A program made the position numbers and the translations under genes. This document shows positions 41,093 through 64,000 of a stretch of 64,000 nt of DNA, one piece after another. The notes beneath the pieces were generated by a model. The model searched no databases and had not been told where the DNA came from. It saw only the letters and a list, made by a program, of their open reading frames with translations. Every line of letters begins with the position of its first letter. Position 1 is the first letter of the stretch. The stretch lies in IMG/VR virus record IMGVR_UViG_3300017971_000190, positions 157,680-221,679 of that record; one strand, given 5' to 3'.

Positions 41093-43858
41093 TTAAACCC
41101 TAACCGGTACATCCGGATCAATTATAATTACACAGCGTTGATTGCCACCATAATTACTAGCATCTAAAATTATTCCTGCTTTAGTTTGAAAATTATTTGA
41201 ATTTTTAATAGGAACGTCGTTTCTAAATTGCCCAGGATTAACCCAACTCAAAATAGCTGGATCTCCAGCAACAGGAGCAGGTACCAAAGCAGCATCAAAT
41301 TGTACTTCTACTTTTCCTGAATTTACTACTTCTCCTATGACAGCATTGTACACACCAACAAAGGTAGCTGATTTAAAAGAACCTGTGGCAGCAGAACAAT
41401 CTGTAGGGGAAATAGTATTATCCGCACTTACATATCCAGCTTGATACTGAACCATAGCAGAAGTATCAAGCCCGTTTATTTTTAACTCTTCATGATAATG
41501 TAAACCGTCAGCATTTGAGCCATCTAAAAGTGTATCCACATTGCTAGAAGTAAAGTTAGGAGTGGTTAATGCAACTCCCCCAATACTAAACCCTGTACCA
41601 CTTGGAACATCTAGCGTCGTAACATTGGTTTGAAGGTCTACTAAAGTAGAAGTGGCGTATATATCACCATTTATGTCTAAACGAGGAATTGAAAAATCCC
41701 CACCAATTAGTGGAGTAGCCGTACTACTATTGGCGATGTATAATTTATTACTTCCAAGTTCATTTTGCCCAGCATTGTGGCCGAGCATAACATTTCCACT
41801 CGCAGCACCAGTTAAACTGAGCCCAGTACTATTACCGATGCAAACATTTTGGCTTCCTGTGAGACCTACTCCAAGATCTCCCAAAGCACTTGACCCGACA
41901 GCTACATTATTATCTCCAGCTGTAGCACCGTAATGAGCACGAACCCCTACAGAAACATTATTTGATCCGGAAATTAAATTAACACTTGCGCTGCGTCCTA
42001 GTGCAGTATTATTAGATCCTCCAGAAGCTGCTTCAAGTGCTTTGTGACCTACAGCCGTGCTACTACTGCTGGCTCCATCTCTAAGAGCATGCCAACCAAC
42101 AGCAGTATTTCGAGTAGTTCCAGTTGTAACTGAACATGTTTCTTCACCTATGGCAACTGTTTCAGCAGTAGAATTACTTCCACTCATAGCATTGTAGCCA
42201 ACAGCTACATTTGAATACCCATTAGTAAGGGCTACTAAAGAATTTTCTCCTACGCCTACATTTGCTCCACCAGTAAGAGTAAAATTACCTGAATTTAATC
42301 CTAAGAAAGTATTGTTGGTGCCGTAAATGTGTAACGCTGGAGTAGTATCAAAAGAAAGAACACCAACAGTAGAAGAAATAGTAATTGGTAAATCAAAACG
42401 ATTGAAATAAATATTGGCCCCCCTATTTAAAGAGGTTCCTATATCCAACCCGGTAACTAAGACATCTGTTTTAATATCTACATAAAGTCCCGCTGGATTA
42501 AGACCAAAAAATTGAGTGTACCCAATTTCGTTTAGATCAGCTACGTCAGTAGGGTTGGTTTTATGTTCAAGCCAAAGAGTTGACGTTGGGCCAATTAAGC
42601 GAGTTCTGAATGCTTCTACGTTACCAGTCCCATCTCCCGCAGCAACAACATGTCCAGCTACTTCTCCAGTTGCACCATTTGCATCGTAGTTAATTACAAA
42701 AGGTTCAGCAGATGTTTGTAGAAGATCTGCATTGATCGTCAATTCACTAGAAGTAAAATCTCCATAAATTAATGGAGGATTGACAGTATTATTTGAAATA
42801 TAAAGTTTGTTACTTCCTACTTCATTTTGACCAGCTCTCCAACCGATAAAGACATTTTCAGATCCAGTAGCATTAATACCAGCTTGATAACCTACTACTG
42901 TATTCTTACTTCCAGTTAGATTATTTTGAAGAGAGTCTGTTCCGATTGCTATATTTTGATCACCACCAGTATGTAATTCGAGAGCACTATTACCAATGGC
43001 AATACAATCTCTAGAAGCTACTGAAGAATAAAATGATCTGTATCCTATTGCAACATTGTCATGACCATTATCATTGGAATAAAGGGCTTCATGGCCAAGT
43101 GCGGTGTTAGCGTCTCCAACTGTAATTTGATAGCCAGCTCTATACCCGACAACAGTATTATTAGCTGCGGTGGTTGTAGCTTTAAGAGTTTCTTTTCCTA
43201 TTGCTGTATTGCCTGAACCGGTGAGAGTTAGATTTCCAGAATCAGATCCTAAAAATAGGTTATTTACCCAGTAAGAGTGTAAAAATCTTTTTGAGTCTAC
43301 AAAAATAATTCCTTCAGGAACCGAGGTAGTAGAAGGTAAATAAATATTTGGACCGGAAATACTACCAGCATCTAAGGCGTCAGCGTAAAGTGTCCCAGCT
43401 CTATTGGCAGGATCTCCTAAATCATACCCTGTGGCATAAAAGTTATTATCAATATTTACAATACCAGTTCCATGTGGATCTAGTGTAATATCCCCATTAT
43501 TAGAAGTGGTAATTGTTTGGCCGTTTATCAGTGTGGTGGTAGCATCAATGCTGAAAGGAATTTCAACACTAAGAGTTCCACCATAAAAACGATGAGCACC
43601 AAAAGCAGGAACTGTAAAAGAACCACCACCCCCTACTTTTAAATCAGCTCCTCCATCAGTTCTTAGTTCTGCACCAACCCCCCATACTTGAAAATCATGT
43701 CCATTTTCTACATACACATCTTTTTGAGTAGGAGAACCTCCAATTGTTAATCGACCAGACTGGGGAGCAATATTGCCAGCAAGAAGAGTATCTGTATCTG
43801 CAATTTCCCCATGAATGCGTTGAATGACATCAAAATATACTGTTCTATAGCTTCCCAC
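41093..43858 (-). CDS. fibre/adhesin with YadA-like beta-roll repeats
   Basis: Many approx. 14-aa repeats NTA(I/V)G..AL....G..N in two arrays; C-terminal cement-like module. Confidence 0.75.
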   Translation of the reverse strand: MGSYRTVYFDVIQRIHGEIADTDTLLAGNIAPQSGRLTIGGSPTQKDVYVENGHDFQVWGVGAELRTDGGADLKVGGGGSFTVPAFGAHRFYGGTLSVEIPFSIDATTTLINGQTITTSNNGDITLDPHGTGIVNIDNNFYATGYDLGDPANRAGTLYADALDAGSISGPNIYLPSTTSVPEGIIFVDSKRFLHSYWVNNLFLGSDSGNLTLTGSGNTAIGKETLKATTTAANNTVVGYRAGYQITVGDANTALGHEALYSNDNGHDNVAIGYRSFYSSVASRDCIAIGNSALELHTGGDQNIAIGTDSLQNNLTGSKNTVVGYQAGINATGSENVFIGWRAGQNEVGSNKLYISNNTVNPPLIYGDFTSSELTINADLLQTSAEPFVINYDANGATGEVAGHVVAAGDGTGNVEAFRTRLIGPTSTLWLEHKTNPTDVADLNEIGYTQFFGLNPAGLYVDIKTDVLVTGLDIGTSLNRGANIYFNRFDLPITISSTVGVLSFDTTPALHIYGTNNTFLGLNSGNFTLTGGANVGVGENSLVALTNGYSNVAVGYNAMSGSNSTAETVAIGEETCSVTTGTTRNTAVGWHALRDGASSSSTAVGHKALEAASGGSNNTALGRSASVNLISGSNNVSVGVRAHYGATAGDNNVAVGSSALGDLGVGLTGSQNVCIGNSTGLSLTGAASGNVMLGHNAGQNELGSNKLYIANSSTATPLIGGDFSIPRLDINGDIYATSTLVDLQTNVTTLDVPSGTGFSIGGVALTTPNFTSSNVDTLLDGSNADGLHYHEELKINGLDTSAMVQYQAGYVSADNTISPTDCSAATGSFKSATFVGVYNAVIGEVVNSGKVEVQFDAALVPAPVAGDPAILSWVNPGQFRNDVPIKNSNNFQTKAGIILDASNYGGNQRCVIIIDPDVPVRV

Positions 43859-43861
43859 GAT

Positions 43862-44617
43862 TTAAGCCTTCTTTAAAGGTAATCCCAATTGTACAACTAA
43901 AATAGATGTAGTCTTAGCATAACCAACTTGCTGAACTACATTCCCGCTAGTATTGGGAGGAGTATTGGTTATGGCACCAGCTGTGGAAGGATCTACATAA
44001 TAGTACAAATCAGCAGTTAAAGCTCCAGCAAAACCGCCTATCTCTCCCGAACGATTAATAATACATGTAGTAGCCGTAGGCTTGGAAATAACAACACCTA
44101 CAGCTGGCATTGTACTTGTAGAATCTGCTTTTGCTTTGTCTACACTGCTAGCACCAGTTTGATATACAACGTCTCTTACGGCTACAGTAGCAGGACAATT
44201 CCATTCTGTTTCTAAAACTTCAATGTCAGGAATAGGATCTACACCCGTAAATACATGAGTAACACCGTGTGGAATAGGTGCTCCACCTGGACCAATTATT
44301 ACTCCATCTGTATCATGAGTAGCATCTCCCCCCGTTTTCATTCTTAAATTATTAGTAGCATCTACCCAAAGATGATAGGTACCTAAACGGAATTTATCAG
44401 GACCGAACCATGCAGAATCATAATGAACAGAAGTAGCATCTAAATCAACAATTTTAATTTGACCATTTCTTAAAAGAATGTCATATCGTTTATCATTTAT
44501 TGTTTTATCATACTCTATATGAGGGAAAGTGCGCGAAGAACGACTTCCCAAAACCCCATTTAAGGGACTGGAAAGTGATATAGCCTGTTGAGTAAGATTA
44601 TCTATTCTTAAGCCCAC
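43862..44617 (-). CDS. structural protein with tailspike-like and capsid-cement-like modules
   Basis: FRLGTYHLWVDATNNLRMK..TDGVIIG and a C-terminal AVGVV..YYVDPSTAG..QQVGYA module. Confidence 0.6.
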   Translation of the reverse strand: MGLRIDNLTQQAISLSSPLNGVLGSRSSRTFPHIEYDKTINDKRYDILLRNGQIKIVDLDATSVHYDSAWFGPDKFRLGTYHLWVDATNNLRMKTGGDATHDTDGVIIGPGGAPIPHGVTHVFTGVDPIPDIEVLETEWNCPATVAVRDVVYQTGASSVDKAKADSTSTMPAVGVVISKPTATTCIINRSGEIGGFAGALTADLYYYVDPSTAGAITNTPPNTSGNVVQQVGYAKTTSILVVQLGLPLKKA

Positions 44618-46369: not shown

Positions 46370-47215
46370 TTAAGCAGAAGGAAATGACAGATTGTAGGTA
46401 GTACACAAACGCTCCAAAGAAGCTCTATCTAATCCTAAACTGGTACTAATAACATTGAAAGATGAAAAGCTCTCTAAACAACAACGAAGAACTTTATTTA
46501 TAGGAAGTCCAAAATCTTGCTCTACTTTTAAAACATGAGGGGGTTTAAAATTGTAGCAATTTGTACTACAGTAAGAAATTCCCTTTTTAGTAACTTTGGA
46601 AGAGAGCCGTTTTTCACAGACAGGGCATACAGAAGAGGACAAAATCCTGTATTGACGATCTACTAAACTTTCTTCCTCAATTTTCTTTTTTAAGGCCGAT
46701 TGTCTTAATTTAAGCAAAGCTCCATTAAGGATCTTTTTCAATTCGTTGGTAGAAATTCCGGTAAGAATTGTTAGCTCATTATAGCTAAGAGAAGTACGTT
46801 TCTTTTTAGTTTGTTTGTTTTCTTCTTCTTCATTCTGTTTTGTAACATAATCTAAAATACAATTATTGCACCAGCTTTTTCCTGGAGTATGGAATAAACA
46901 ACTTTCTAGTCCACATGGCTGGTACATGGTAATATTCAACTCAGGACACTGATAAGAATTTCGGACAAGTAATTTTGGGTGAAAAGTATCACTAAGAAGA
47001 TAAGTATCTTCAAAAATTTCGTTTAAAATGGAAAATAATTCTAGAGAGTTTTCAGAGGGTTGTTTTTCATAAAGTAGTAAAATAGTTTCTAAAAGTCCTG
47101 AACAAGGGCAGCTATCTTCTTCAGGATTACAACAGGGAATGTCTTTTTTAAACATTCCTTCCTCACGTAAAAACTTGACTAGTATCTCGTAAAGGGGTTT
47201 GAAAGCACACGGCAT
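46370..47215 (-). CDS. sigma70 region-4-like HTH protein with Cys clusters (putative transcription regulator)
   Basis: LSYNELTILTGISTNELKKILNGALLKLR; CP..C..C..C cluster; CPVC..YCSTNC. Confidence 0.65.
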   Translation of the reverse strand: MPCAFKPLYEILVKFLREEGMFKKDIPCCNPEEDSCPCSGLLETILLLYEKQPSENSLELFSILNEIFEDTYLLSDTFHPKLLVRNSYQCPELNITMYQPCGLESCLFHTPGKSWCNNCILDYVTKQNEEEENKQTKKKRTSLSYNELTILTGISTNELKKILNGALLKLRQSALKKKIEEESLVDRQYRILSSSVCPVCEKRLSSKVTKKGISYCSTNCYNFKPPHVLKVEQDFGLPINKVLRCCLESFSSFNVISTSLGLDRASLERLCTTYNLSFPSA

Positions 47216-47344
47216 TTTTATTTTGTTCTCCCATCGGAAAAAGAGGTTGTTCTATCTTTGTTTAACAAAGTAGTCTATAAAATAAAGTACCGGTGTTACT
47301 GTTTAAACAGGCGGTTTTGTAAATCAAAGTCCAAGGAGACCAAA

Positions 47345-48346
47345 ATGCAAAACAGAGATTTCCCCTACTTCAGCTGTACTGTTGTCTTTGTAGACGAAAA
47401 AGGAAAAGAGGTAACTCAAACCGATTTCCCCACTCTACAAAAATTCTTTTTAGCTTGGAAGGAAGGAGAATTAAAAAGGAGGGTTAAAATCGTAGAAAAA
47501 GAAGATGGAGTTTTAAACTCCTACTTTAAAAAAGTAGAAAACGATACTAGAGCAGCTTTATTAAGTTTAACATTTAATTTGCAAGAATGTTATGATTGGC
47601 TTAATGTACATTTAGGATTGAGCAATCATATTTTAGCTTATCAGAAAATAGAAATGGGAGCACATGCCCGAGTTAGAATTCCTAAAAATGATTTGGTATT
47701 CTTTGCAGCACCTGGTGATTCCGCAGAATCTGCTGCCAAAGTAGGGTTTGTTTTTGTTCCATCCCTACCCATAGAATTTAATTTTGAAAGAAAACGGGGA
47801 GAGTTTAAGGACAATCCCAAAAAGGTAGTAGAAGAATTTCTAAATGAAATGGTAAAAGAAACTATTGCTAAAGACAATGCTACCGTAGTATTTTTACTCA
47901 AACAGGGGGCACAAGACACGGTGCTTTGCGAACAATTTTCTCCAGCATCTTTTAATACTATTAGGCATAAACTTTGGGAAAAACAAATACCAGCCCCCAC
48001 ACTGCTGACTACTCCAGCGGTATTAGCTTTTATAGTGGAAGAAGCTCAGTGGTTTTATCCAGATAATAAAAGTAATTGGGCAACAGGACAAGTTGGAAAA
48101 TTTGGAGATGTGTCTATTATTTGTGGTGGCTCTGAAAAAGATGAGTTTGGTTGTGGTCTCGATTTTACAGATTACTTCATGTTTGGACCACCCCAAAAAG
48201 TGGGCGTAAGAACTGAAAAAATTCCAATAGAAATAGAATCCATAGACAAGTCTATTTTAGGGGTTTCTTTAATGGGGTGGAGCCTTTATGGATCTCGGGG
48301 CACACTGATATTTGGCAGTGGAATTTCCCACGCCAAAATTGGATAG
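47345..48346 (+). CDS. divergent HK97-fold major-capsid-like protein
   Basis: Only plus-strand gene; AAGGAG SD before ATG 47345; segments such as FVFVPSLPIEFN, TGQVGKFGD and FGPPQKVGV..GWSLYGSRG resemble large-phage MCPs as I recall them. Confidence 0.55.
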   Translation: MQNRDFPYFSCTVVFVDEKGKEVTQTDFPTLQKFFLAWKEGELKRRVKIVEKEDGVLNSYFKKVENDTRAALLSLTFNLQECYDWLNVHLGLSNHILAYQKIEMGAHARVRIPKNDLVFFAAPGDSAESAAKVGFVFVPSLPIEFNFERKRGEFKDNPKKVVEEFLNEMVKETIAKDNATVVFLLKQGAQDTVLCEQFSPASFNTIRHKLWEKQIPAPTLLTTPAVLAFIVEEAQWFYPDNKSNWATGQVGKFGDVSIICGGSEKDEFGCGLDFTDYFMFGPPQKVGVRTEKIPIEIESIDKSILGVSLMGWSLYGSRGTLIFGSGISHAKIG

Positions 48347-48391: not shown

Positions 48392-48886
48392 TTAGAGCTT
48401 AAGATCTAGAAGATTCTTCTTGCTCTTCTTGGCCTTCTTACCCTTCTTTCCACTACCCTTGGGGCGACCACGCTTACCTGTTTTCTTTGCTGCAGCCTTC
48501 TTCTTGGGAGGACGACCACGACGCTTCTTGGGTGCATCATCGGCAGCCTTCTTCTTGGGAGGACGACCACGACGCTTCTTGGGAGCATCATCGGCAGCCT
48601 TCTTCTTGGGAGGACGACCACGACGCTTCTTGGGAGCATCATCGGCAGCCTTCTTCTTGGGAGGACGACCACGACGCTTCTTGGGTGCCTCTCCATCATC
48701 GGGAGCTTCTACCACCTCTTCTACCACCGTACCGTTAATCGGAACGATGTAGGTAGTGGTGTTCTTACGAGACGTCATCTCGACGGTAAGAACGCCAGCG
48801 CGGGCCTTCACAATGGACCCCTTTGTCAGTAGTCCGAACACCTGTGAAGCGGACATGTTAACAAGCTTGGTTTCTGGTTTTGCCAT
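48392..48886 (-). CDS. multi-AT-hook, Lys-rich DNA-binding protein (HMGA/H1-like)
   Basis: 4x KKRRGRPPKKKAADDAP plus KRGRPKGS; start moved to ATG 48886 (AGGAG SD). Confidence 0.8.
   Translation of the reverse strand: MAKPETKLVNMSASQVFGLLTKGSIVKARAGVLTVEMTSRKNTTTYIVPINGTVVEEVVEAPDDGEAPKKRRGRPPKKKAADDAPKKRRGRPPKKKAADDAPKKRRGRPPKKKAADDAPKKRRGRPPKKKAAAKKTGKRGRPKGSGKKGKKAKKSKKNLLDLKL
48492..48690 (-). repeat. 51-bp tandem repeat, about 4 copies
   Basis: Unit gcagccttcttcttgggaggacgaccacgacgcttcttgggXgcatcatcg at 48492, 48543, 48594 and 48645. Confidence 0.95.
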
Positions 48887-48917
48887 TTGATTTCTCCTAT
48901 GATTTGGCATTTGGGAA

Positions 48918-50540
48918 TTACGACAAATCTCGTCGTATACGGACAAATTGATTAAATCTGGCAACTGCTACTGGATCGGGATCTTTTTGAAAGAGGAAAT
49001 CTATTTTCATGCCTACCAACTCTTTCCTCTGCTTCCACAGCTCCATACGCTGATCAGATCCACCTTTATGTTCCAGACCTCCTCCAACTGCAAATTCCTT
49101 ACCGTCGTACCGTACAATAAAACGACGTAATCGGGCACTGTGTCTAAAGGTTACTACGCCTTTGGGGGTGCAATAAACTCTCCGAGCAGATGAGTCTTTA
49201 GCCGCTTTCTTAAGTCTCTGAATAAACGACTCCAGCTCTTCTACTGTATCAAAAGAAGGTCGAACTTGCAAGTAGTATTTTGTCTTTTTTACCTTTCCAA
49301 CCTTTTTCATTATCCTGTAGATTTTATCCGTAATCTCTGGATCTGCTGCTGCGTTCTTCCCCTTCTTCCCAGGCTCCAACCTCACAATGACTCCAGTAGC
49401 CTCTTCCTCTGCCTTAAATTTAATCACATCAGGGCCTCTGTGGTCATCCAAACGAAGCGGGGCATCTACAGTCTTAATCATTGCTCCCTCAAAACTACGG
49501 TCCAGAGCCCTATTGTAGAATTTATGGAGAGCTTCCTCCATTCTAAGAATTTTGTGGCCTAGAATACCTATGTTAGGGCTTCGATAGTACACCTTGGGGG
49601 TGATCTTTAAAGGATTGAGAGCCGCTCCTTCTTGCGAGCAGCCTAAGAGATGATGTTTGCGTTCTTCCCAAGGCATTTCAAAAATACCAGCTTCGTAGGC
49701 TTTAAGAGGTGCCCAATCCCATACTACAGCTCGAACATCATCTAGAAATTCTGCTTCATTGAAGTTCTTATAACTACTCACGATACTAGAAGTTTTATTC
49801 CACGACTTTGCTAGGAATTCTCCATCAATGAAGACATCTTCTTCAGGGCCTACCAAGTCTCTCGCCAAACTAAAAAGCTGTCTAGTAAAGAGTTCGACAT
49901 TTTCAATATGCTTTTTTCGCCGGTTAGCCCTACTGACTATAATTACCTTTTTGACTTTTTGAAAAATAAAAAGAAGGGCTCTTTCTCCGTCTAATTTATA
50001 CTCACCAGCTTTTGGAAATTTTAATGGTTTGTATTTTTTGGGAAGTCTTTTGTAGGCCAACCCCAACATACACCCTCTAAACTGCATAGAGGCATTGTTA
50101 GTACCAGTCTTACCTTCTGTGAGAAAACCTAAACCAAAAACGGATTTAATTGTTTTCGGACCTACTCCTACACGAAGGTCATGGTCTAAAATTCTCAATA
50201 ACCATTTAGCTACTAGAGGGTCACTTTTGAGAAGTAGAGCTTTGGTTTTAGCAGTAGCTTTTTTAGAACCCCAACGACGCTCTTTAAGGTAACTGGCCAG
50301 CTTAACAAATTTAAGCCAAGAGTCATGTGGAGTTATTTCGGAAGTACAACGGGCGGTTTTTATTATAGGATGAACAAAGTACCGATCCTGCCCAAGAGCC
50401 ATTTTAAAAATGGTTTTTAAAACTGGATTGGTTTTTGTTTCTTCCAAAAGGATTTTTTTCTCTTTGTTCTTTTCGTACACCTCCAGCCTTTCCAAACAAT
50501 TAAAGGCTTCCTCAACTTGTGTTTTGGTGGATTTTTTCAT
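48918..50540 (-). CDS. lig: ATP-dependent DNA ligase
   Basis: EYKLDGER adenylation motif, IDGE, EGAMIK, IKFK, OB-fold C-terminus. Confidence 0.92.
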   Translation of the reverse strand: MKKSTKTQVEEAFNCLERLEVYEKNKEKKILLEETKTNPVLKTIFKMALGQDRYFVHPIIKTARCTSEITPHDSWLKFVKLASYLKERRWGSKKATAKTKALLLKSDPLVAKWLLRILDHDLRVGVGPKTIKSVFGLGFLTEGKTGTNNASMQFRGCMLGLAYKRLPKKYKPLKFPKAGEYKLDGERALLFIFQKVKKVIIVSRANRRKKHIENVELFTRQLFSLARDLVGPEEDVFIDGEFLAKSWNKTSSIVSSYKNFNEAEFLDDVRAVVWDWAPLKAYEAGIFEMPWEERKHHLLGCSQEGAALNPLKITPKVYYRSPNIGILGHKILRMEEALHKFYNRALDRSFEGAMIKTVDAPLRLDDHRGPDVIKFKAEEEATGVIVRLEPGKKGKNAAADPEITDKIYRIMKKVGKVKKTKYYLQVRPSFDTVEELESFIQRLKKAAKDSSARRVYCTPKGVVTFRHSARLRRFIVRYDGKEFAVGGGLEHKGGSDQRMELWKQRKELVGMKIDFLFQKDPDPVAVARFNQFVRIRRDLS

Positions 50541-50622: not shown

Positions 50623-51705
50623 CTAGTCGTCTTCCGCCGTCATCTCCACGATTTCGACATTCATGTTTTGACGGAAGTTCTTTAGACGGAATGTACGACG
50701 TTTGCCTCTGTATTTACCTTCGAGAATGGCAATACTAATTTGCCCTTGGTAGGTCTTAAAAATAATACCTTCCAGACGCTCTCCAGTTTTCTCGTCATCC
50801 CACTGCACAGTCATGCCGCCCTTAAGAGGAAGGGCTTTTTGAGACTTCTGTTGACGTTGCCTACGATTAAGAGCACGAATAAGAGGAGTAATATAGAGAA
50901 TTTGATCCTCATGCACAAAGTTTTTCTGAAGCCAACTGAAAGCAGCAGCAAAAAGCTTAACACCTTCTCCAGACTCAGCATCATCTATAATCTTGGTCCG
51001 CATTTCTAACAGTTTGCGGTAAGACGGTAGTAACCTACGCACGGCTTCCCGAGCAGAGAAAGGAAGCTTGTCATTAAAATCTTCAAACGCCTTAGCATTT
51101 TCTACGTTGACGTAGTATTGCCCACAGCTGAAATTATTTTTAATGACTTTGGTTTTAGGATCGTCGGGATCTAGACGTTCCCCCTCTTTGCAGAAGACTT
51201 GTCCCATTATTTCCCGGTTAAACATGGTACATGTACCACAGGTAATCGGAATAACGTCCCCTACTTCATACTCCTTGTCGTCTACCGTAAATCCTTTTTG
51301 TACTTTGTAGACGGGTGTAGTGTCTTTATCTTTAGCTAGTTTCTTTTTGCGACCGCGCTTCTTCTTTTTCTTAGGCTTCTTCTCACGCTCATCTTCATCG
51401 TCATCATCGGAGTCATCATCATCACCATCGTCAGAATCGGAGTCATCGGAGTCATCATCATCACCATCGTCAGAATCGGAGTCATCATCATCGTCATCAT
51501 CGTCGTCGTCATCATCGTCATCATCGTCGTCGTCCTCATCTACAGTATCATCTGAGTCATCGTCATCGTAATCTTCATACTCTTCATCTTCCTCTTCTTC
51601 GTCCTCAGACTCATCCTCCTCCTCGGTCTCTACATCCTCATACTCGTCCTCTTCATGCCGATGGCTTTTGGACTTTGTGCTGTGCTTTTTTCTCTTCTTA
51701 GCCAT
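50623..51705 (-). CDS. basic-acidic-basic protein with Cys4 domain
   Basis: About 90-aa D/E tract, KKKKKRGRKKK, CGTC..C..C; start moved to ATG 51705 (AAGGAG SD). Confidence 0.75.
   Translation of the reverse strand: MAKKRKKHSTKSKSHRHEEDEYEDVETEEEDESEDEEEEDEEYEDYDDDDSDDTVDEDDDDDDDDDDDDDDDDDDSDSDDGDDDDSDDSDSDDGDDDDSDDDDEDEREKKPKKKKKRGRKKKLAKDKDTTPVYKVQKGFTVDDKEYEVGDVIPITCGTCTMFNREIMGQVFCKEGERLDPDDPKTKVIKNNFSCGQYYVNVENAKAFEDFNDKLPFSAREAVRRLLPSYRKLLEMRTKIIDDAESGEGVKLFAAAFSWLQKNFVHEDQILYITPLIRALNRRQRQQKSQKALPLKGGMTVQWDDEKTGERLEGIIFKTYQGQISIAILEGKYRGKRRTFRLKNFRQNMNVEIVEMTAEDD
51390..51650 (-). repeat. Asp/Glu low-complexity tract including a 39-nt duplication
   Basis: ggagtcatcatcatcaccatcgtcagaatcggagtcatc occurs twice. 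Confidence 0.85.
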
Positions 51706-51771
51706 TACGACTCCTTTGAAGAACAATCTGTTCCTGCTGTGATGCCCAAGGGCGTGTAAAGTGTAGCAGCT

Positions 51772-51821: not shown

Positions 51822-52709
51822 TTAGCCCTCCGACACAGCAGCTTCTAATTTTCTGACAGCTTTGACAACCCACGTCAAATCTTTTGAACTTAGATTATAC
51901 TTTTTAGAAAGTGCACTGATTTTTTTGGGTTTTTTAGCATCTAGATAAAGTCGAGCAGCCTTTGACAGGCGTCGTCCTCCTCCTACATCCCATTTTTTTT
52001 CTAGAAAAGTGTACAGCTTTTTACATAGCTCGGTATTTTCTACATTTTCCTCTAAGAGTTTGCAGTGTTCTTTAAATTCTGAACGATCCATATCTTTGAT
52101 TATTCTTAGAATTATAGGAATAAGGACAGCATCTTGGTACTCTATATTATCTCCAGAGAAGCTGCTTTTAATCTCTTTCAAAATTGGAAGTAATTCAGGA
52201 GCCTCGGTTTTTTCCGGTATAGTTGCATTTTTATTTTTAGACTGTTTTTTCCTAGGCTTTATCGTTGTTTGCTTTTTATGACTTTTCCGAGGTGTTATTT
52301 TAATTAAAACAGCATCCTCCTCTATAATGTTTCGTAATTCATCTGCGGTTTTAAAAGACAAAGAGCGAACAACTTTATTATTCTTCATCTCTGCATCGAT
52401 AATTGGAACCCCTAAAGAAAGGAGCTGTTCAGGTTGTCCTTTTCCACAAATTAGAAGGCGATGTATTCTCTTAGCATGACGATAAAGTTCGTGATATTTT
52501 TCAGGAGCTGTTAGGATAACATAGTTTCTAGACTCATCTGTTTGCTTCGGAAGTTTAAATTCTTCTTCTTCTCCCTCAGGTGGGTAAACAAATACTTTAC
52601 CACCAGTATTAGGGGAATGAATGTGAAATACCACCACAAATGTTGGCTTCATAGTTGCAAGCCCAACAGCGTGGACTTTTCTGACTTTTGATTTTTTCTT
52701 TTTTGTCAC
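51822..52709 (-). CDS. hypothetical basic protein
   Basis: 295 aa. Confidence 0.7.
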   Translation of the reverse strand: MTKKKKSKVRKVHAVGLATMKPTFVVVFHIHSPNTGGKVFVYPPEGEEEEFKLPKQTDESRNYVILTAPEKYHELYRHAKRIHRLLICGKGQPEQLLSLGVPIIDAEMKNNKVVRSLSFKTADELRNIIEEDAVLIKITPRKSHKKQTTIKPRKKQSKNKNATIPEKTEAPELLPILKEIKSSFSGDNIEYQDAVLIPIILRIIKDMDRSEFKEHCKLLEENVENTELCKKLYTFLEKKWDVGGGRRLSKAARLYLDAKKPKKISALSKKYNLSSKDLTWVVKAVRKLEAAVSEG

Positions 52710-53215
52710 AGGGCTTGTCTCCTGATTAGATCTACCAGTACTGTTTGTAACCGTTTGCTGGAATTCAATTCCAAAACGGTTTCTTTTCTTTGTGTTTTCG
52801 TTACTACTTTACAACCTTTACTATCAGTTTTTGATAAGGATTTAGTTGATACTAAAGTAACAAGTTTACCAGCACTTATGTAAAAGGGCAACAGTTTAAA
52901 ATTTGTGTTTAGAGATTGATTCAAAAAATCGGTTAAAAGCTTATCCACTCCAATAGAGTGATCGTACATTCTACAAATTTCAACCAATAAAGGTATGGTG
53001 AATTTTGGTCTACCTCTCTTCAATTTCTTATATAGAATTCCATTGGTTAATTTAATTTCAGAGCCTTCGTGTGTTTCCAGTATAATGTGGTCTTTAATTA
53101 GATTAATTCTTCCTACAGTTTCTTCAGGAAGAAAATATTGTAACCAATAATGTAAACTGGTAGATCCTCCATTAGCTAAAGCTGTAAATACTCGAACCAA
53201 CATATCACAATGCAC
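52706..53215 (-). CDS. hypothetical protein with KRGRPK motif
   Basis: 169 aa; overlaps both neighbours. Confidence 0.65.
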   Translation of the reverse strand: MHCDMLVRVFTALANGGSTSLHYWLQYFLPEETVGRINLIKDHIILETHEGSEIKLTNGILYKKLKRGRPKFTIPLLVEICRMYDHSIGVDKLLTDFLNQSLNTNFKLLPFYISAGKLVTLVSTKSLSKTDSKGCKVVTKTQRKETVLELNSSKRLQTVLVDLIRRQAL

Positions 53216-56131: not shown

Positions 56132-57298
56132 TTACTTCCTTTTCTTCCCCCAGGTTGATTTTCCAATAGAAATTGCTTCGATAGCCACACTTTCCAAAAC
56201 TGCATGAGCATTGATTGTATAGCTTTTAATAGATGCTTGAGCAGAAAGTAGGAGCTTGAGCATAGTATTAATATCTTGAATATGTTTAAGAGCTACCTCA
56301 CGTCCTACATGTTGTACATTTTTGACCGCCCAAAATTTAGATCTATCAGTAAGTTTTTTATCCACCCAACTAGTAAGTAACAAATGCAAAATTAAAACTA
56401 TTTGATCAATAAAAGATGTATGGTTTTCTACACTATTTACAGCTTGAAAAGCCAATGCTAAATCGAGAGAGAAAAGAGCACTGACATAATCTTGAGAAGC
56501 CAAGTAAGGCTTAGCCGCAGCACTCTCGCGAAGTATGGTTGGAAGATGTTTTTTAATATCAACTGACTTGCCTGCTGTCCTAACATAATTTACCACACTC
56601 TCTAACAGAATCAAGGCATCTCTTGGATGACCGTTAACCACACCAGCTATTTCTTGTCTAGTCTTTTTTGTTAAGTTCAATCCCTCTTTTTTGCCTATTC
56701 GGAGAAGTAATTTAGATGTAAGAGCCGGAGAAATAGGACGTAGTATAAATTTAGTAGCTCTACTACGGATAGTATTAGGCAACTTTTCTGGTTCAGTGGT
56801 ACAAAGAATAAATCGACTATCCCCAGGAGGATGTTCAAATGTTTTAAGAGCTGCTTGCCAAGCAGGACCAGTAATTTGGTGACACTCGTCCAGAATAAAA
56901 ATTTTGTAACGAGTAATAGGAGCATATTCGGCTTGCTCCTGAAGATTCCGCATATCTTCTATTTTTCGTTTATCAGCTGCATCTATTTCTTTAACATCTG
57001 GATGGGTACCTGTCCCCATTATAACAGAGCGCATAGCCTTACAACTATCACATTTTCGGCAAGGTTCACCCTGAGGAGTGAGTTTTTCACAATTGGCATA
57101 GAGAGCAATTAACCTAGCGAGGGTAGTTTTACCAGAGCTGTAAGGACCGGCTAAAAGAATAGTAGGTGGAATAGTTTTTGCTTCTACCATTCCTCTAATT
57201 TTTTGAACAGCTAAGTCTTGTCCAATTACCGTTTTAAGAGAACGAGGACGGTATTTGATAGCAAGAGATATATTTTTTGGGGCGTTTTCGGTTGTCAT
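56132..57298 (-). CDS. dnaX: DNA polymerase III gamma/tau-like clamp loader
   Basis: KYRP..VIGQ, GPYSSGKTT, C..PC..C..C zinc module, ILDECH, SRA. Confidence 0.92.
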   Translation of the reverse strand: MTTENAPKNISLAIKYRPRSLKTVIGQDLAVQKIRGMVEAKTIPPTILLAGPYSSGKTTLARLIALYANCEKLTPQGEPCRKCDSCKAMRSVIMGTGTHPDVKEIDAADKRKIEDMRNLQEQAEYAPITRYKIFILDECHQITGPAWQAALKTFEHPPGDSRFILCTTEPEKLPNTIRSRATKFILRPISPALTSKLLLRIGKKEGLNLTKKTRQEIAGVVNGHPRDALILLESVVNYVRTAGKSVDIKKHLPTILRESAAAKPYLASQDYVSALFSLDLALAFQAVNSVENHTSFIDQIVLILHLLLTSWVDKKLTDRSKFWAVKNVQHVGREVALKHIQDINTMLKLLLSAQASIKSYTINAHAVLESVAIEAISIGKSTWGKKRK

Positions 57299-60966: not shown

Positions 60967-61296
60967 TTAAAGGTCCCAGCCGCGCACAGTCTTACGACCA
61001 TTACGAAGGGTGCGAAGACACGCTTTTTTGATCATAGCATAAAGCTCATTGGCCAGCCATGCCTCAATATCTTTCTCAGCACGAAGACCGGTAGCTTTCA
61101 GCACTTCCTTAACCTTAGAAGTAGTCACAATTTTAACACCCACGTCTGCTTTCGCTTTCTTAATGCGAGCTTTTACCTGCTTTGCTGTAGGTGCATCACC
61201 AGCAGGAGTTCCAGCTTTCTTGTTTGTACTTCCCTTAGGACGCCCGCGCTTCTTAGGAGCTGCATCTGTTTTCTTTGTTCTCTTCTTTTTTGGCAT
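60967..61296 (-). CDS. bacterial-type histone-fold protein with Lys-rich N-terminal tail and AT-hook
   Basis: C-terminal IVTTSKVKEVLK..GLR..........L..MIKKAC......GRKTVRGWD resembles Bdellovibrio Bd0055 (VVTSKVKKLIK...GRKTVMARD, recalled); RKT-x4-D clamp. Confidence 0.85.
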   Translation of the reverse strand: MPKKKRTKKTDAAPKKRGRPKGSTNKKAGTPAGDAPTAKQVKARIKKAKADVGVKIVTTSKVKEVLKATGLRAEKDIEAWLANELYAMIKKACLRTLRNGRKTVRGWDL

Positions 61297-63567: not shown

Positions 63568-63762
63568 TTATCGTTTGATTGAAAGCAGTATCGTGTTTAA
63601 ATCCACACAAGGAGCTAACCAGATACACTTTTTGCACCGTGGTTTTTCACGATAATAACCATAGCAAGTTGGACTATTTCTTGCGCTTCTTTTTAGTTTT
63701 CTTATTTTTGCTGCCCTTTGGACGTCCACGCTTTTTCGGAGCTGCCTTTTTCTTTTTGGCAT
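63568..63762 (-). CDS. candidate small Cys4 protein overlapping the poly-Asp gene in another frame
   Basis: MPKRKRQ...CYGYYREKPRCKKCIWLAPC; weak SD. Confidence 0.4.
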   Translation of the reverse strand: MPKRKRQLRKSVDVQRAAKIRKLKRSARNSPTCYGYYREKPRCKKCIWLAPCVDLNTILLSIKR

Positions 63763-64000
63763 CTTTGCGCTTCTTACTATACCTACGTTTCTTAGGCGCT
63801 GGTTCTTCGTCATCATCGTCGTCGTCATCATCATCGTCATCATCGTCATCATCATCATCATCATCGTCGTCATCGTCGTCGTCATCATCGTCGTCATCAT
63901 CGTCGTCATCATCGTCGTCATCATCGTCGTCATCATCGTCATCATCGTCGTCATCATCGTCGTCATCATCGTCGTCATCATCGTCGTCATCATCGTCGTC
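63674..64000 (-). CDS. C-terminal part of a poly-Asp/AT-hook protein (5' end outside window)
   Basis: Manual translation: D64-EEPAPKKRRYSKKRKDAKKKKAAPKKRGRPKGSKNKKTKKKRKK-stop (TAG at 63674). The supplied MMTT.. ORF is a shadow frame. Confidence 0.85.
   Translation of the reverse strand, partial: DDDDDDDDDDDDDDDDDDDDDDDDDDDDDDDDDDDDDDDDDDDDDDDDDDDDDDDDDDDDDDDDEEPAPKKRRYSKKRKDAKKKKAAPKKRGRPKGSKNKKTKKKRKK
63809..64000 (-). repeat. GAY codon repeat encoding at least 64 consecutive Asp
   Basis: Uninterrupted mixed gtc/atc triplets up to the window edge. Confidence 0.95.

What the first reader, a model, noticed from the sequence alone, without database searches (positions are those of the whole stretch)
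48392..48886. HMGA/H1-like protein built from an exact 51-bp repeat expansion
Seen: an approx. 60-aa N-terminal beta-rich domain, then four near-identical AT-hook repeats with very few nucleotide differences (recent expansion, probably variable in copy number), then a fifth hook and a Lys tail. Known: AT-hooks bind AT-rich minor grooves, and Lsr2/H-NS use hook-like motifs for xenogeneic silencing. Inference: a tunable DNA bridger or anti-silencer.
Basis: partly seen in the sequence, partly recalled or inferred. Interest (0 to 1): 0.6.

Follow-up and report, generated by a model that had tools for sequence, protein, structure and literature searches.

The report
Jumbo-phage AT-hook protein with variable repeats
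A small gene of an uncultured giant bacteriophage encodes a folded 60-residue head of unknown fold followed by five eukaryote-style "AT-hook" DNA-binding motifs, four of them made by a very recent 51-bp in-frame repeat whose copy number (2, 3 or 4) is the only length difference between otherwise near-identical assemblies of the same phage.

Summary
Window 48392..48886 (- strand) is a 164-aa gene. It has a folded N-terminal domain (about residues 1-55), four 17-aa units carrying a KKRRGRPPKKK hook, a fifth hook (KRGRPKG), a Lys-rich tail and a short hydrophobic C-terminal motif.

The four units come from a 51-bp tandem repeat (3.8 copies, 99% identity). Full units differ only at one synonymous base.

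The window is the last 64 kb of a 221,679-bp record of an uncultured jumbo tailed phage. Three other assemblies of the same phage carry 2, 3 and 3 units. Their 12.5-kb flanks are at least 99.95% identical and have no other indel. All are short-read assemblies, so exact copy numbers need reads that span the array.

The protein family is tiny: four other metagenomic lineages. All share the N-terminal domain. Their tails vary (0, 3, 3 or 6 hooks, Lys-rich, or hooks plus an acidic tail). Where DNA is held, the gene follows the ATP-dependent DNA ligase gene directly.

The N-terminal fold matches nothing known. I read the protein as a phage-encoded multivalent AT-hook architectural DNA-binding protein of the replication/repair module. 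"Bridger" and "anti-silencer" remain untested.

It is a new architecture of a known DNA-binding motif.

The parts
48392..48886 (-). CDS of the 164-aa AT-hook protein (stop codon included)
   Evidence: ORF list and translation. Relatives with the same architecture.
48893..48898 (-). Shine-Dalgarno AGGAGA, 6 nt before ATG 48886
   Evidence: Read directly. An equivalent SD after the ligase stop is seen in L006 and L007.
48722..48886 (-). Folded N-terminal domain (residues 1-55): helix 13-22, strands 24-29, 32-39 and 42-49. 16 alignment columns are invariant across the family.
   Evidence: AlphaFold2 model with alignment A1, mean pLDDT 81. Alignment. HMMER hits at E 1e-18 to 7e-06.
48689..48721 (-). 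Acidic linker EEVVEAPDDGE (residues 56-66) between the domain and the hooks
   Evidence: Translation. Low pLDDT.
48485..48688 (-). Four 51-bp (17-codon) tandem units, each encoding A-P-KKRRGRPPKKK-AADD. The last unit ends AAAK.
   Evidence: TRF period 51, 3.8 copies, 99%. Unit-by-unit listing. 2 and 3 units in sister assemblies.
48455..48475 (-). Fifth, non-repeat AT-hook KRGRPKG (residues 138-144)
48416..48454 (-). Lys-rich tail (residues 145-157)
48395..48415 (-). C-terminal motif NLLDLKL. It is conserved as (N/S)LL(D/S)LKL at the extreme C-terminus of the two closest lineages. It is a possible docking peptide (inference).
   Evidence: No other ORF of the phage record ends in a similar motif.
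48918..50540 (-). Upstream, co-oriented ATP-dependent DNA ligase gene (540 aa). Its stop lies 31 nt before the hook gene's ATG.
   Evidence: Pfam PF01068 and PF04675, PHROG 114 at E 4.6e-47. The ligase-then-hook gene order is conserved in L006, L007 and L008.

Best explanation
This is a phage-encoded, multivalent AT-hook architectural DNA-binding protein.

**Where it is made.** It is made from the replication/recombination/repair gene block of an uncultured jumbo tailed phage and is probably co-transcribed with the ATP-dependent DNA ligase gene.

**How it most likely works (inferred)**
- The five R-G-R-P cores, set in a disordered, very basic tail (47 K+R in 105 residues), insert into the minor groove of short AT tracts of double-stranded DNA.
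- The most plausible target is the phage's own 39% GC genome during replication, recombination or condensation.
- The small folded N-terminal domain, and perhaps the C-terminal LLDLKL peptide, supply protein-protein contacts, either with itself or with a partner.

**The repeat (shown, with a caveat).** Hook number, and hence avidity and reach, changes in steps of one 17-residue unit by slippage or unequal recombination in the perfect 51-bp array. This gives 2-, 3- and 4-unit alleles in one phage population.

**Shown versus inferred**
- Shown: gene, repeat, motif, fold prediction, family, synteny, and copy-number differences between assemblies.
- Inferred: DNA binding, AT selectivity, the target DNA, and what the N-terminal domain contacts.
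For: - **Hooks.** There are five canonical hooks, [KR]n-G-R-P-[PK]. Pfam AT_hook reports 5 stretches, though below threshold as is usual for a 13-residue motif. The relative P0005 carries a precomputed PF02178 hit.
- **Folded domain.** It is predicted with pLDDT about 87 over residues 11-50 and conserved at 44-72% identity in four other lineages.
- **Architecture.** 'Domain plus basic tail' is kept in every relative, while tail content varies: 0, 3, 3 or 6 hooks, a Lys-rich tail, or hooks plus an acidic end. This fits selection for a basic DNA-binding tail rather than for a particular sequence.
- **Context.** The block holds RecA, a Macro-domain protein, an SbcD/Mre11-like protein, a DHH/RecJ-like protein, a DNA methylase, a clamp-loader subunit, an SbcC-like protein, ligase, and then this gene. 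The order ligase then hook gene, with a Shine-Dalgarno right after the ligase stop, recurs in L006, L007 and L008.
- **Other hook-bearing ORFs.** The same phage region has four more ORFs with single hooks. One has a histone-fold (DUF1931-like) C-terminal half.
- **Copy number.** Alleles of 2, 3, 3 and 4 units sit in flanks that are at least 99.95% identical with no other indel. Unitig depths in two public runs give a mean of 2.6-2.9 units.
Against: - No binding experiment exists, and the host is unknown.
- Pfam AT_hook is far below its cut-off (8.4 vs 17.4 bits).
- The N-terminal fold has no significant match in PDB, BFVD or the ESM Atlas, so its role is a guess.
- The gene order may only reflect collinearity of related phage genomes rather than a functional link to ligase.
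- All assemblies are short-read. An array of about 200 bp of near-identical 51-bp units can be mis-resolved by assemblers, so the exact unit numbers are not proven. Depth in both runs fits a pure 3-unit allele reasonably well.
- AT-hook-like basic repeats can also bind RNA or act as localisation signals.
Confidence: 0.55

Rival explanations
1. Host-takeover factor or anti-silencer. The protein binds AT-rich host or phage DNA. It either displaces a host xenogeneic silencer from the AT-rich phage genome or compacts and shuts off the host nucleoid. It bridges DNA through N-terminal self-association.
For: - The phage is AT-rich (39% GC), the kind of DNA that silencers target (established knowledge).
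- The tail is multivalent.
- The homodimer score of 0.38-0.40 against 0.00 for the controls fell just below the mark. The tool says this is not to be counted as support.
Against: - No Lsr2, H-NS or MvaT domain is present.
- The host and its silencers are unknown.
- The gene lies in the DNA-metabolism block, not among small early genes.
- Self-association is not shown.
Confidence: 0.15
2. Accessory factor of the neighbouring DNA ligase or of the repair machinery. The hooks tether the N-terminal domain or the C-terminal peptide, and hence ligase, the clamp or the SbcCD/RecA machinery, to DNA. This would stimulate nick sealing or end joining.
For: - The gene pair ligase then hook protein is conserved, with 9-31 nt spacing, in lineages whose ligases are only 46-61% identical.
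- A clamp-loader subunit is encoded nearby.
- The C-terminal xLL(D/S)LKL recalls bacterial clamp-binding QLxLxL peptides (from memory, a lead only).
Against: - The whole block is collinear in these relatives, so adjacency is weak evidence.
- No beta-clamp gene was found in the 221-kb record, though the record is about 63% complete.
- The motif is absent from P0006 and P0007 and from every other ORF of the phage.
- The ligase already has its own DNA-binding domain (PF04675).
Confidence: 0.12
3. Virion-packaged DNA-condensing protein, protamine-like or similar to an internal head protein. It would neutralise charge in the very large capsid.
For: - The tail is extremely basic and disordered (pI 11.1).
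- The gene lies at the border of the replication block and the structural genes. Tailspike and virion proteins lie from 41093 to 44617.
Against: - It is transcribed with the ligase/repair genes.
- The only PHROG hit (head-tail connector) covers just the basic repeat, residues 76-94, so it is low-complexity.
- No virion data exist.
Confidence: 0.1
4. The 51-bp array acts at DNA level, as iterons of an origin or another protein-binding site embedded in a gene. The protein repeat would be a by-product.
For: - The units are direct, perfectly homogenised repeats, and the array is the strongest tandem repeat in the window.
- Phage origins can lie inside genes (established for lambda O).
Against: - The period is a multiple of 3 and the frame is kept in all alleles.
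- The units encode a canonical protein motif.
- The same motif recurs in relatives whose DNA repeats are degenerate (70-81% matches) and in other ORFs with different codons.
Confidence: 0.03
5. The copy-number differences are assembly artefacts. The phage has one fixed number of units.
For: - All four contigs are short-read assemblies.
- Logan k=31 contigs break in the array.
- Depth in both runs is compatible with a pure 3-unit allele.
Against: - The 2-unit contig has a junction (GCT-type unit joined to the tail) that exists in neither the 3-unit nor the 4-unit form. It therefore cannot be a simple collapse at the final k of 141.
- A mixture model fits the depths better.
- The array itself is present in every assembly.
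Confidence: 0.3

Closest known systems
Myxococcus xanthus CarD (bacterial HMGA-like transcription factor)
   Same: - It is a prokaryotic protein with a folded N-terminal protein-interaction domain, followed by an intrinsically disordered C-terminal region. That region has an acidic segment and then four RGRP AT-hooks (PMC4374960).
- Here too an acidic patch (EEVVEAPDDGE) precedes the hooks.
- In CarD orthologues the hook region can be replaced by a histone H1-like Lys-rich region (Garcia-Heras 2009, cited). In this family P0006 likewise has a Lys-rich tail with no GRP core.
   Different: - There is no CarD_CdnL_TRCF domain or any other Pfam domain.
- The N-terminal domain is about 55 residues rather than about 180.
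- The gene is phage-encoded.
- The hooks are a perfect recent tandem repeat with copy-number alleles.
Eukaryotic HMGA1/HMGA2
   Same: Several R-G-R-P hooks sit in a disordered basic chain. The fifth hook, RGRPKGS, is close to the second HMGA1 hook as I recall it (memory, not tested). The relative P0007 ends in an acidic tail, as HMGA does.
   Different: - HMGA has no folded domain and three hooks, as I recall it (memory). This protein has a folded N-terminal domain and five hooks.
- It has no acidic tail.
- There is no detectable homology beyond the motif.
Lsr2 / H-NS / MvaT xenogeneic silencers and their phage-borne copies
   Same: These are small proteins that combine an N-terminal association domain with a C-terminal AT-rich minor-groove reader using an RGR 'hook-like' element. 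Phages are known to carry such genes (papers listed).
   Different: - Those readers are single and embedded in a folded domain. Here there are five free hooks in a disordered repeat.
- No Lsr2 or H-NS Pfam match was found.
- Oligomerisation is not shown.
Linker histone H1 and bacterial H1-like Lys/Ala/Pro-rich proteins
   Same: A Lys-rich, Ala/Pro-containing disordered tail (KKKAA, KKGKKAKKSKK) with pI 11.
   Different: No winged-helix globular domain. The GRP cores are an AT-hook feature, not an H1 feature.
AT-hook ORFs noted in other mobile elements (Ralstonia corticoviral element, filamentous phage p12J, plasmid pJTPS1)
   Same: AT-hook motif proteins encoded by phage-like elements and proposed to act in replication (PMC1950889).
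   Different: They are unrelated in sequence as far as tested. tblastn of this protein against 50,697 phage records found nothing.

Membership tests
AT-hook motif (Pfam PF02178; GRP core flanked by Arg/Lys) | Gly-Arg-Pro core with basic residues on both sides | tested here: met
   There are five cores: 4 x KKRRGRPPKKK and KRGRPKG.
AT-hook motif (Pfam PF02178; GRP core flanked by Arg/Lys) | Score above Pfam's gathering threshold | tested here: not met
   8.4 bits against 17.4, E 3.2, with 5 stretches. The model is only 13 positions long, so this is weak evidence against. The relative P0005 has a precomputed PF02178 hit.
AT-hook motif (Pfam PF02178; GRP core flanked by Arg/Lys) | Selective binding to the minor groove of AT tracts | not testable with these tools
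   Needs EMSA or footprinting.
HMGA | Wholly disordered protein without a folded domain | tested here: not met
   Residues 13-49 fold with pLDDT about 87.
HMGA | Acidic C-terminal tail | tested here: not met
   The protein ends in a Lys-rich stretch plus NLLDLKL. Only the relative P0007 has an acidic end.
Linker histone H1 | Winged-helix globular domain (PF00538) | tested here: not met
   No Pfam family at E<=0.01 on the whole protein, and none at E<=10 on residues 1-66.
Lsr2 / H-NS silencers | Lsr2 (PF11774) or H-NS (PF00816) domains | tested here: not met
   No Pfam or NCBIfam hit.
Lsr2 / H-NS silencers | N-terminal domain that self-associates | tested here: inconclusive
   The homodimer job gave no verdict: 0.39 against a mark of 0.42.
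CarD (CarD_CdnL_TRCF + HMGA-like tail) | N-terminal CarD_CdnL_TRCF RNAP-interacting domain | tested here: not met
   No Pfam hit. The fold is alpha plus three beta strands with no significant structural match.
CarD (CarD_CdnL_TRCF + HMGA-like tail) | Acidic segment followed by RGRP repeats in a disordered C-terminal region | tested here: met
   EEVVEAPDDGE is followed by the hooks, and the region has low pLDDT.
The new family itself (N-terminal domain of P0001, P0004-P0007) | Conserved about 55-residue domain with invariant Q15, F17, T21-K22-G23, R29-A30-G31, Y46, P49, followed by a basic tail | tested here: met
   HMMER over 1.84 billion representatives gave 4 true hits, E 1e-18 to 7e-06. Alignment.

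The most novel reading that the evidence does not exclude
This uncultured jumbo phage carries its own eukaryote-like chromatin kit. The kit would comprise an HMGA-like hook-array protein with an orphan fold, a histone-fold (DUF1931-like) protein with an AT-hook tail, and poly-Asp proteins with hooks that could act as chaperone-like counter-ions. The valency of the hook-array protein would be tuned in the population by an in-frame 51-bp VNTR, a contingency-type locus in a phage DNA-packaging or architectural protein.
Probability: 0.2. Interest if true: 0.7.

Novelty: new variant of a known kind. Interest (0 to 1): 0.45.

Why it matters
AT-hooks are a hallmark of eukaryotic chromatin proteins and are rare in prokaryotes and their viruses.

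What this case adds:
- A phage lineage that couples a hook array to an orphan folded domain.
- Several further hook-bearing and histone-fold ORFs in the same region of the phage.
- Hook number that changes by repeat slippage.

Together these give a natural allelic series (2, 3 or 4 repeat units, i.e. 3, 4 or 5 hooks in all) for testing how hook valency sets DNA affinity, spacing and compaction. They also hint that some jumbo phages organise their large AT-rich genomes with their own chromatin-like proteins.

The practical value is modest until the host is known.

Tried and rejected
**Searches that found nothing**
- megablast of 6 kb around the gene, and tblastn of the protein and of the ligase, against 50,697 phage records: no match.
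- Pfam, PHROGs, NCBIfam and PADLOC on the protein and on its halves: nothing real. PHROG 6852 'head-tail connector' matches only the basic repeat, residues 76-94.
- ESM Atlas feature search on residues 1-66: no usable hit.
- IMG/VR pattern scan with the single protein: one hit, L005. It is a chance match seeded on the exact word TTYIVPING inside a 418-aa structural protein, and I rejected it.
- Profile scans of IMG/VR, JGI metagenome contigs and GTDB genomes: only the window's own contig and L007.
- Word-index searches from P0007 and from a 100-column family profile: no new members.
- In the large HMMER search, P0008 (a 952-aa repeat protein) is a spurious hit.
- PDB sequence searches with the family profile and with the tail: nothing.

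**Fold searches of the N-terminal model**
- Foldseek against PDB: best E 0.7.
- VIA-align wide: best Z 3.5.
- BFVD: best E 0.12.
- ESM Atlas: TM <= 0.47.
- Only weak HicA/dsRBD-like and PCNA-fragment resemblances appeared, which I do not count as a match.

**Other tests**
- Complex prediction on two copies of residues 1-66: no verdict (0.39 against a mark of 0.42). It is neither for nor against dimerisation.
- Beta-clamp families PF00712 and PF02768 in the phage record: none. The 298-kb sister contig could not be searched.
- Scan of all ORF C-termini for an LLDLKL-like docking motif: only this gene has a credible one.
- Read laying gave only Logan k=31 contigs, which break inside the array. 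No read spans it, and only depth could be used.

Full report
**1. What is at the coordinates**

Window 48392..48886 is an ORF on the minus strand that translates to 164 residues.
- An AGGAGA box lies 6 nt before ATG 48886, 31 nt after the stop of the upstream gene.
- Two divergent relatives have the same arrangement: ligase stop, then a Shine-Dalgarno, then Met-Ala/Pro-Lys. So 48886 is the start I accept.
- Gene callers on sister contigs chose an ATG eight codons further up.

The protein has six parts:
- a domain of about 55 residues;
- an acidic patch (EEVVEAPDDGE);
- four 17-residue units A-P-KKRRGRPPKKK-AADD;
- a fifth hook, KRGRPKG;
- a Lys-rich stretch;
- the C-terminal heptad NLLDLKL.

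The tail (residues 60-164) holds 47 Lys+Arg, and the whole protein has pI 11.1.

**2. The repeat**

Tandem Repeats Finder reports period 51, 3.8 copies, 99% matches and no indels at 48492..48685. Its score of 381 is the highest of any repeat in the 64-kb window.

In protein register the three full units differ only at the third base of the first Ala codon (GCA, GCT, GCT). The fourth unit starts with GCA and leaves the repeat in its last two codons.

Hooks in other ORFs of the window use different codons. Only this array is recent or kept homogeneous.

Three other frames across the array are also open. The frame used here is the only one continuous with the conserved N-terminal domain.

**3. 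Where the window comes from**

The window is the last 64 kb of a 221,679-bp IMG/VR virus record, estimated 63% complete. It is contig Ga0180438_10000059.
- Almost all genes are on the minus strand, and GC is 39%.
- Portal and large terminase give strong PHROG hits.
- The terminase is at most 29% identical to those of PaBG-like and other jumbo phages.
- Tailspike and virion proteins and a capsule-depolymerase domain lie downstream.

It is therefore an uncultured jumbo tailed phage of a new lineage. The host is unknown.

**4. Gene neighbourhood**

Upstream, on the same strand, the order is:
- RecA;
- a Macro-domain protein;
- a 109-aa hook-bearing ORF;
- an SbcD/Mre11-type phosphoesterase;
- a DHH/DHHA1 (RecJ-like) protein;
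- a DNA methylase;
- a clamp-loader subunit (PF13177);
- an SbcC-like ATPase;
- two unknown ORFs;
- a 367-aa protein with a huge Asp/Glu run;
- a 540-aa ATP-dependent DNA ligase;
- the hook gene.

Downstream is a convergent 362-aa ORF, followed by genes leading into the structural block. The gene is thus the last of a replication/recombination/repair block.

**5. Copy-number variation**

A word-index search with the N-terminal domain found two proteins with a 100% identical domain but lengths differing by 17 residues.
- Their contigs are a 93-kb ENA contig, a 221,517-bp JGI contig from a sister sample, and a 298-kb ENA contig.
- They align to the window over 12.5 kb at 99.95-100% identity. The only gap is in the array: 2, 3 and 3 units against 4 in the window.
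- The 2-unit form has a GCT-type unit joined directly to the tail. This junction is absent from the 3- and 4-unit forms, so it is a distinct allele rather than a simple collapse.

There is a caveat. All are short-read assemblies, and the array (about 200 bp) is longer than a typical read.
- Two public runs hold the locus, but only as Logan k=31 contigs, which break in the array.
- Modelling the unitig depths against the three alleles gives mean unit numbers of 2.9 and 2.6.
- A pure 3-unit allele is the best single fit. A mixture fits better, but at about 12x depth this is only suggestive.

I regard the variation as likely but not proven.

**6. The family**

A full HMMER scan of 1.84 billion representatives with residues 1-66 was justified because the word search and the family scans left the protein open. 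It found four real relatives, with E from 1e-18 to 7e-06. All keep the domain: 16 invariant columns and 44-72% identity.

Their tails differ:

| Protein | Tail |
|---|---|
| P0004 | three hooks |
| P0005 | six hooks |
| P0006 | a Lys/Glu/Gly-rich tail with no GRP core |
| P0007 | three RGRKPK hooks and an acidic, aromatic C-terminus |

Further points on the family (unless stated):
- P0004 and P0005 share the (N/S)LL(D/S)LKL end.
- The tails of L006 and L007 are built on degenerate short DNA repeats. Repeat-driven turnover of the tail is therefore a family trait.
- Further searches (IMG/VR, JGI contigs, GTDB genomes, word index with a profile) added nothing. The family is rare and so far only metagenomic.
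- Where DNA is held, the gene follows the ligase gene and precedes the homologue of the 281-aa ORF. Gene sizes on P0005's contig agree.

**7. The N-terminal domain**

AlphaFold2 with the five-sequence alignment gives a helix (13-22) packed on a three-stranded antiparallel sheet (24-29, 32-39, 42-49). Mean pLDDT is 81. The single-sequence model adds a short N-terminal strand.

No search gives a significant structural neighbour:
- Foldseek against PDB: best E 0.7;
- VIA-align: best Z 3.5;
- BFVD: best E 0.12;
- ESM Atlas: TM at most 0.47.

Only faint HicA/dsRBD-like resemblance appears. A two-copy complex prediction returned no verdict. What this domain contacts is unknown.

**8. Mechanism**

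What follows from established knowledge is this. R-G-R-P cores flanked by Lys/Arg in a disordered chain bind the minor groove of AT tracts. Several hooks in one chain raise avidity and can span or bend DNA.

I therefore read the protein as a multivalent AT-hook architectural DNA-binding protein. Given its operon, it would act on replicating or recombining phage DNA.

The in-frame VNTR changes the repeat-borne hooks between two and four, which gives three to five hooks in all.

Rivals, none of which the data exclude:
- a host-directed silencer or anti-silencer;
- a ligase or clamp accessory;
- a packaged condensing protein.

A purely DNA-level role for the repeat is unlikely.

**9. Comparison with known systems**

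The nearest analogue in architecture is myxobacterial CarD: a folded N-terminal interaction domain, an acidic segment and four RGRP hooks. In CarD orthologues an H1-like Lys-rich tail can replace the hooks (PMC4374960). This family shows the same hook/Lys-rich interchange (P0006).

It is not a member of CarD, HMGA, H1, Lsr2 or H-NS, because their defining domains are absent. AT-hook ORFs have been noted before in phage-like elements (PMC1950889), but no relative of this protein is in the phage collection.

**10. Verdict**

It is a new domain architecture and a new small family built on a known DNA-binding motif, and it is of moderate interest.

No alternative genetic code was used. 

Noticed in passing
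window 60967..61296 (-): A 109-aa ORF has an N-terminal AT-hook (APKKRGRPKGS). Its C-terminal half matches a solved DUF1931 histone-fold protein (9qt0, E 5.8e-4, residues 56-108) and includes an RKTVRGWD stretch at the position of the histone RxTxxxD-type motif. It looks like a phage-encoded alpha3-type histone-fold protein with a hook tail. Phage and DUF1931 histone categories are described in PMC11390915.
   Followed up: partly
window 50623..51726 (-): A 367-aa protein has a run of about 100 residues that is almost pure Asp/Glu. This is followed by KKKKRGRKKK (hook-like) and then a globular C-terminal half with no family hit. It sits directly upstream of the ligase. It could be an acidic counterpart or chaperone of the basic hook proteins (speculation).
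   Followed up: no
window 63674..64000 (-), runs off the contig end: This ORF has a long poly-Asp run encoded by a 12-bp repeat (63807-64000, 16 copies) and then AAPKKRGRPKGSKNKK. The contig ends inside this repeat, so the assembly probably broke here. The other frame gives an (MMTT)n artefact ORF.
   Followed up: no
window 46370..47215 (-): A 281-aa Cys-rich ORF is conserved right after the hook gene in the relatives (26-36% identity). A segment of it (LSYNELTILTGIST...LLKLRQ) looks like a sigma-factor region-4 or HTH motif to me. No family scan supports that reading.
   Followed up: no
window 56132..57298 (-) and the whole 221-kb record: The phage encodes a clamp-loader-type subunit (PF13177, E 7e-28), but no beta-clamp was found in the record (PF00712, PF02768). 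The record is about 63% complete, so the clamp may lie in the missing part or be the host's.
   Followed up: partly
window 52706..53215 (-): A 169-aa ORF carries a single KRGRPK inside what looks like a globular protein. Together with the items above, all five hook-bearing ORFs of the 221-kb record lie in its last 16 kb.
   Followed up: no
window 47258..48346 (+): This is the only sizeable plus-strand gene in the region, and it is convergent on the hook gene. It is present in the near-identical contigs and, judging by size, on P0005's contig. It is absent from L006, so it looks like an inserted or lineage-specific gene. Its only hit is a negligible one to an HK97 capsid model (E 0.07).
   Followed up: no
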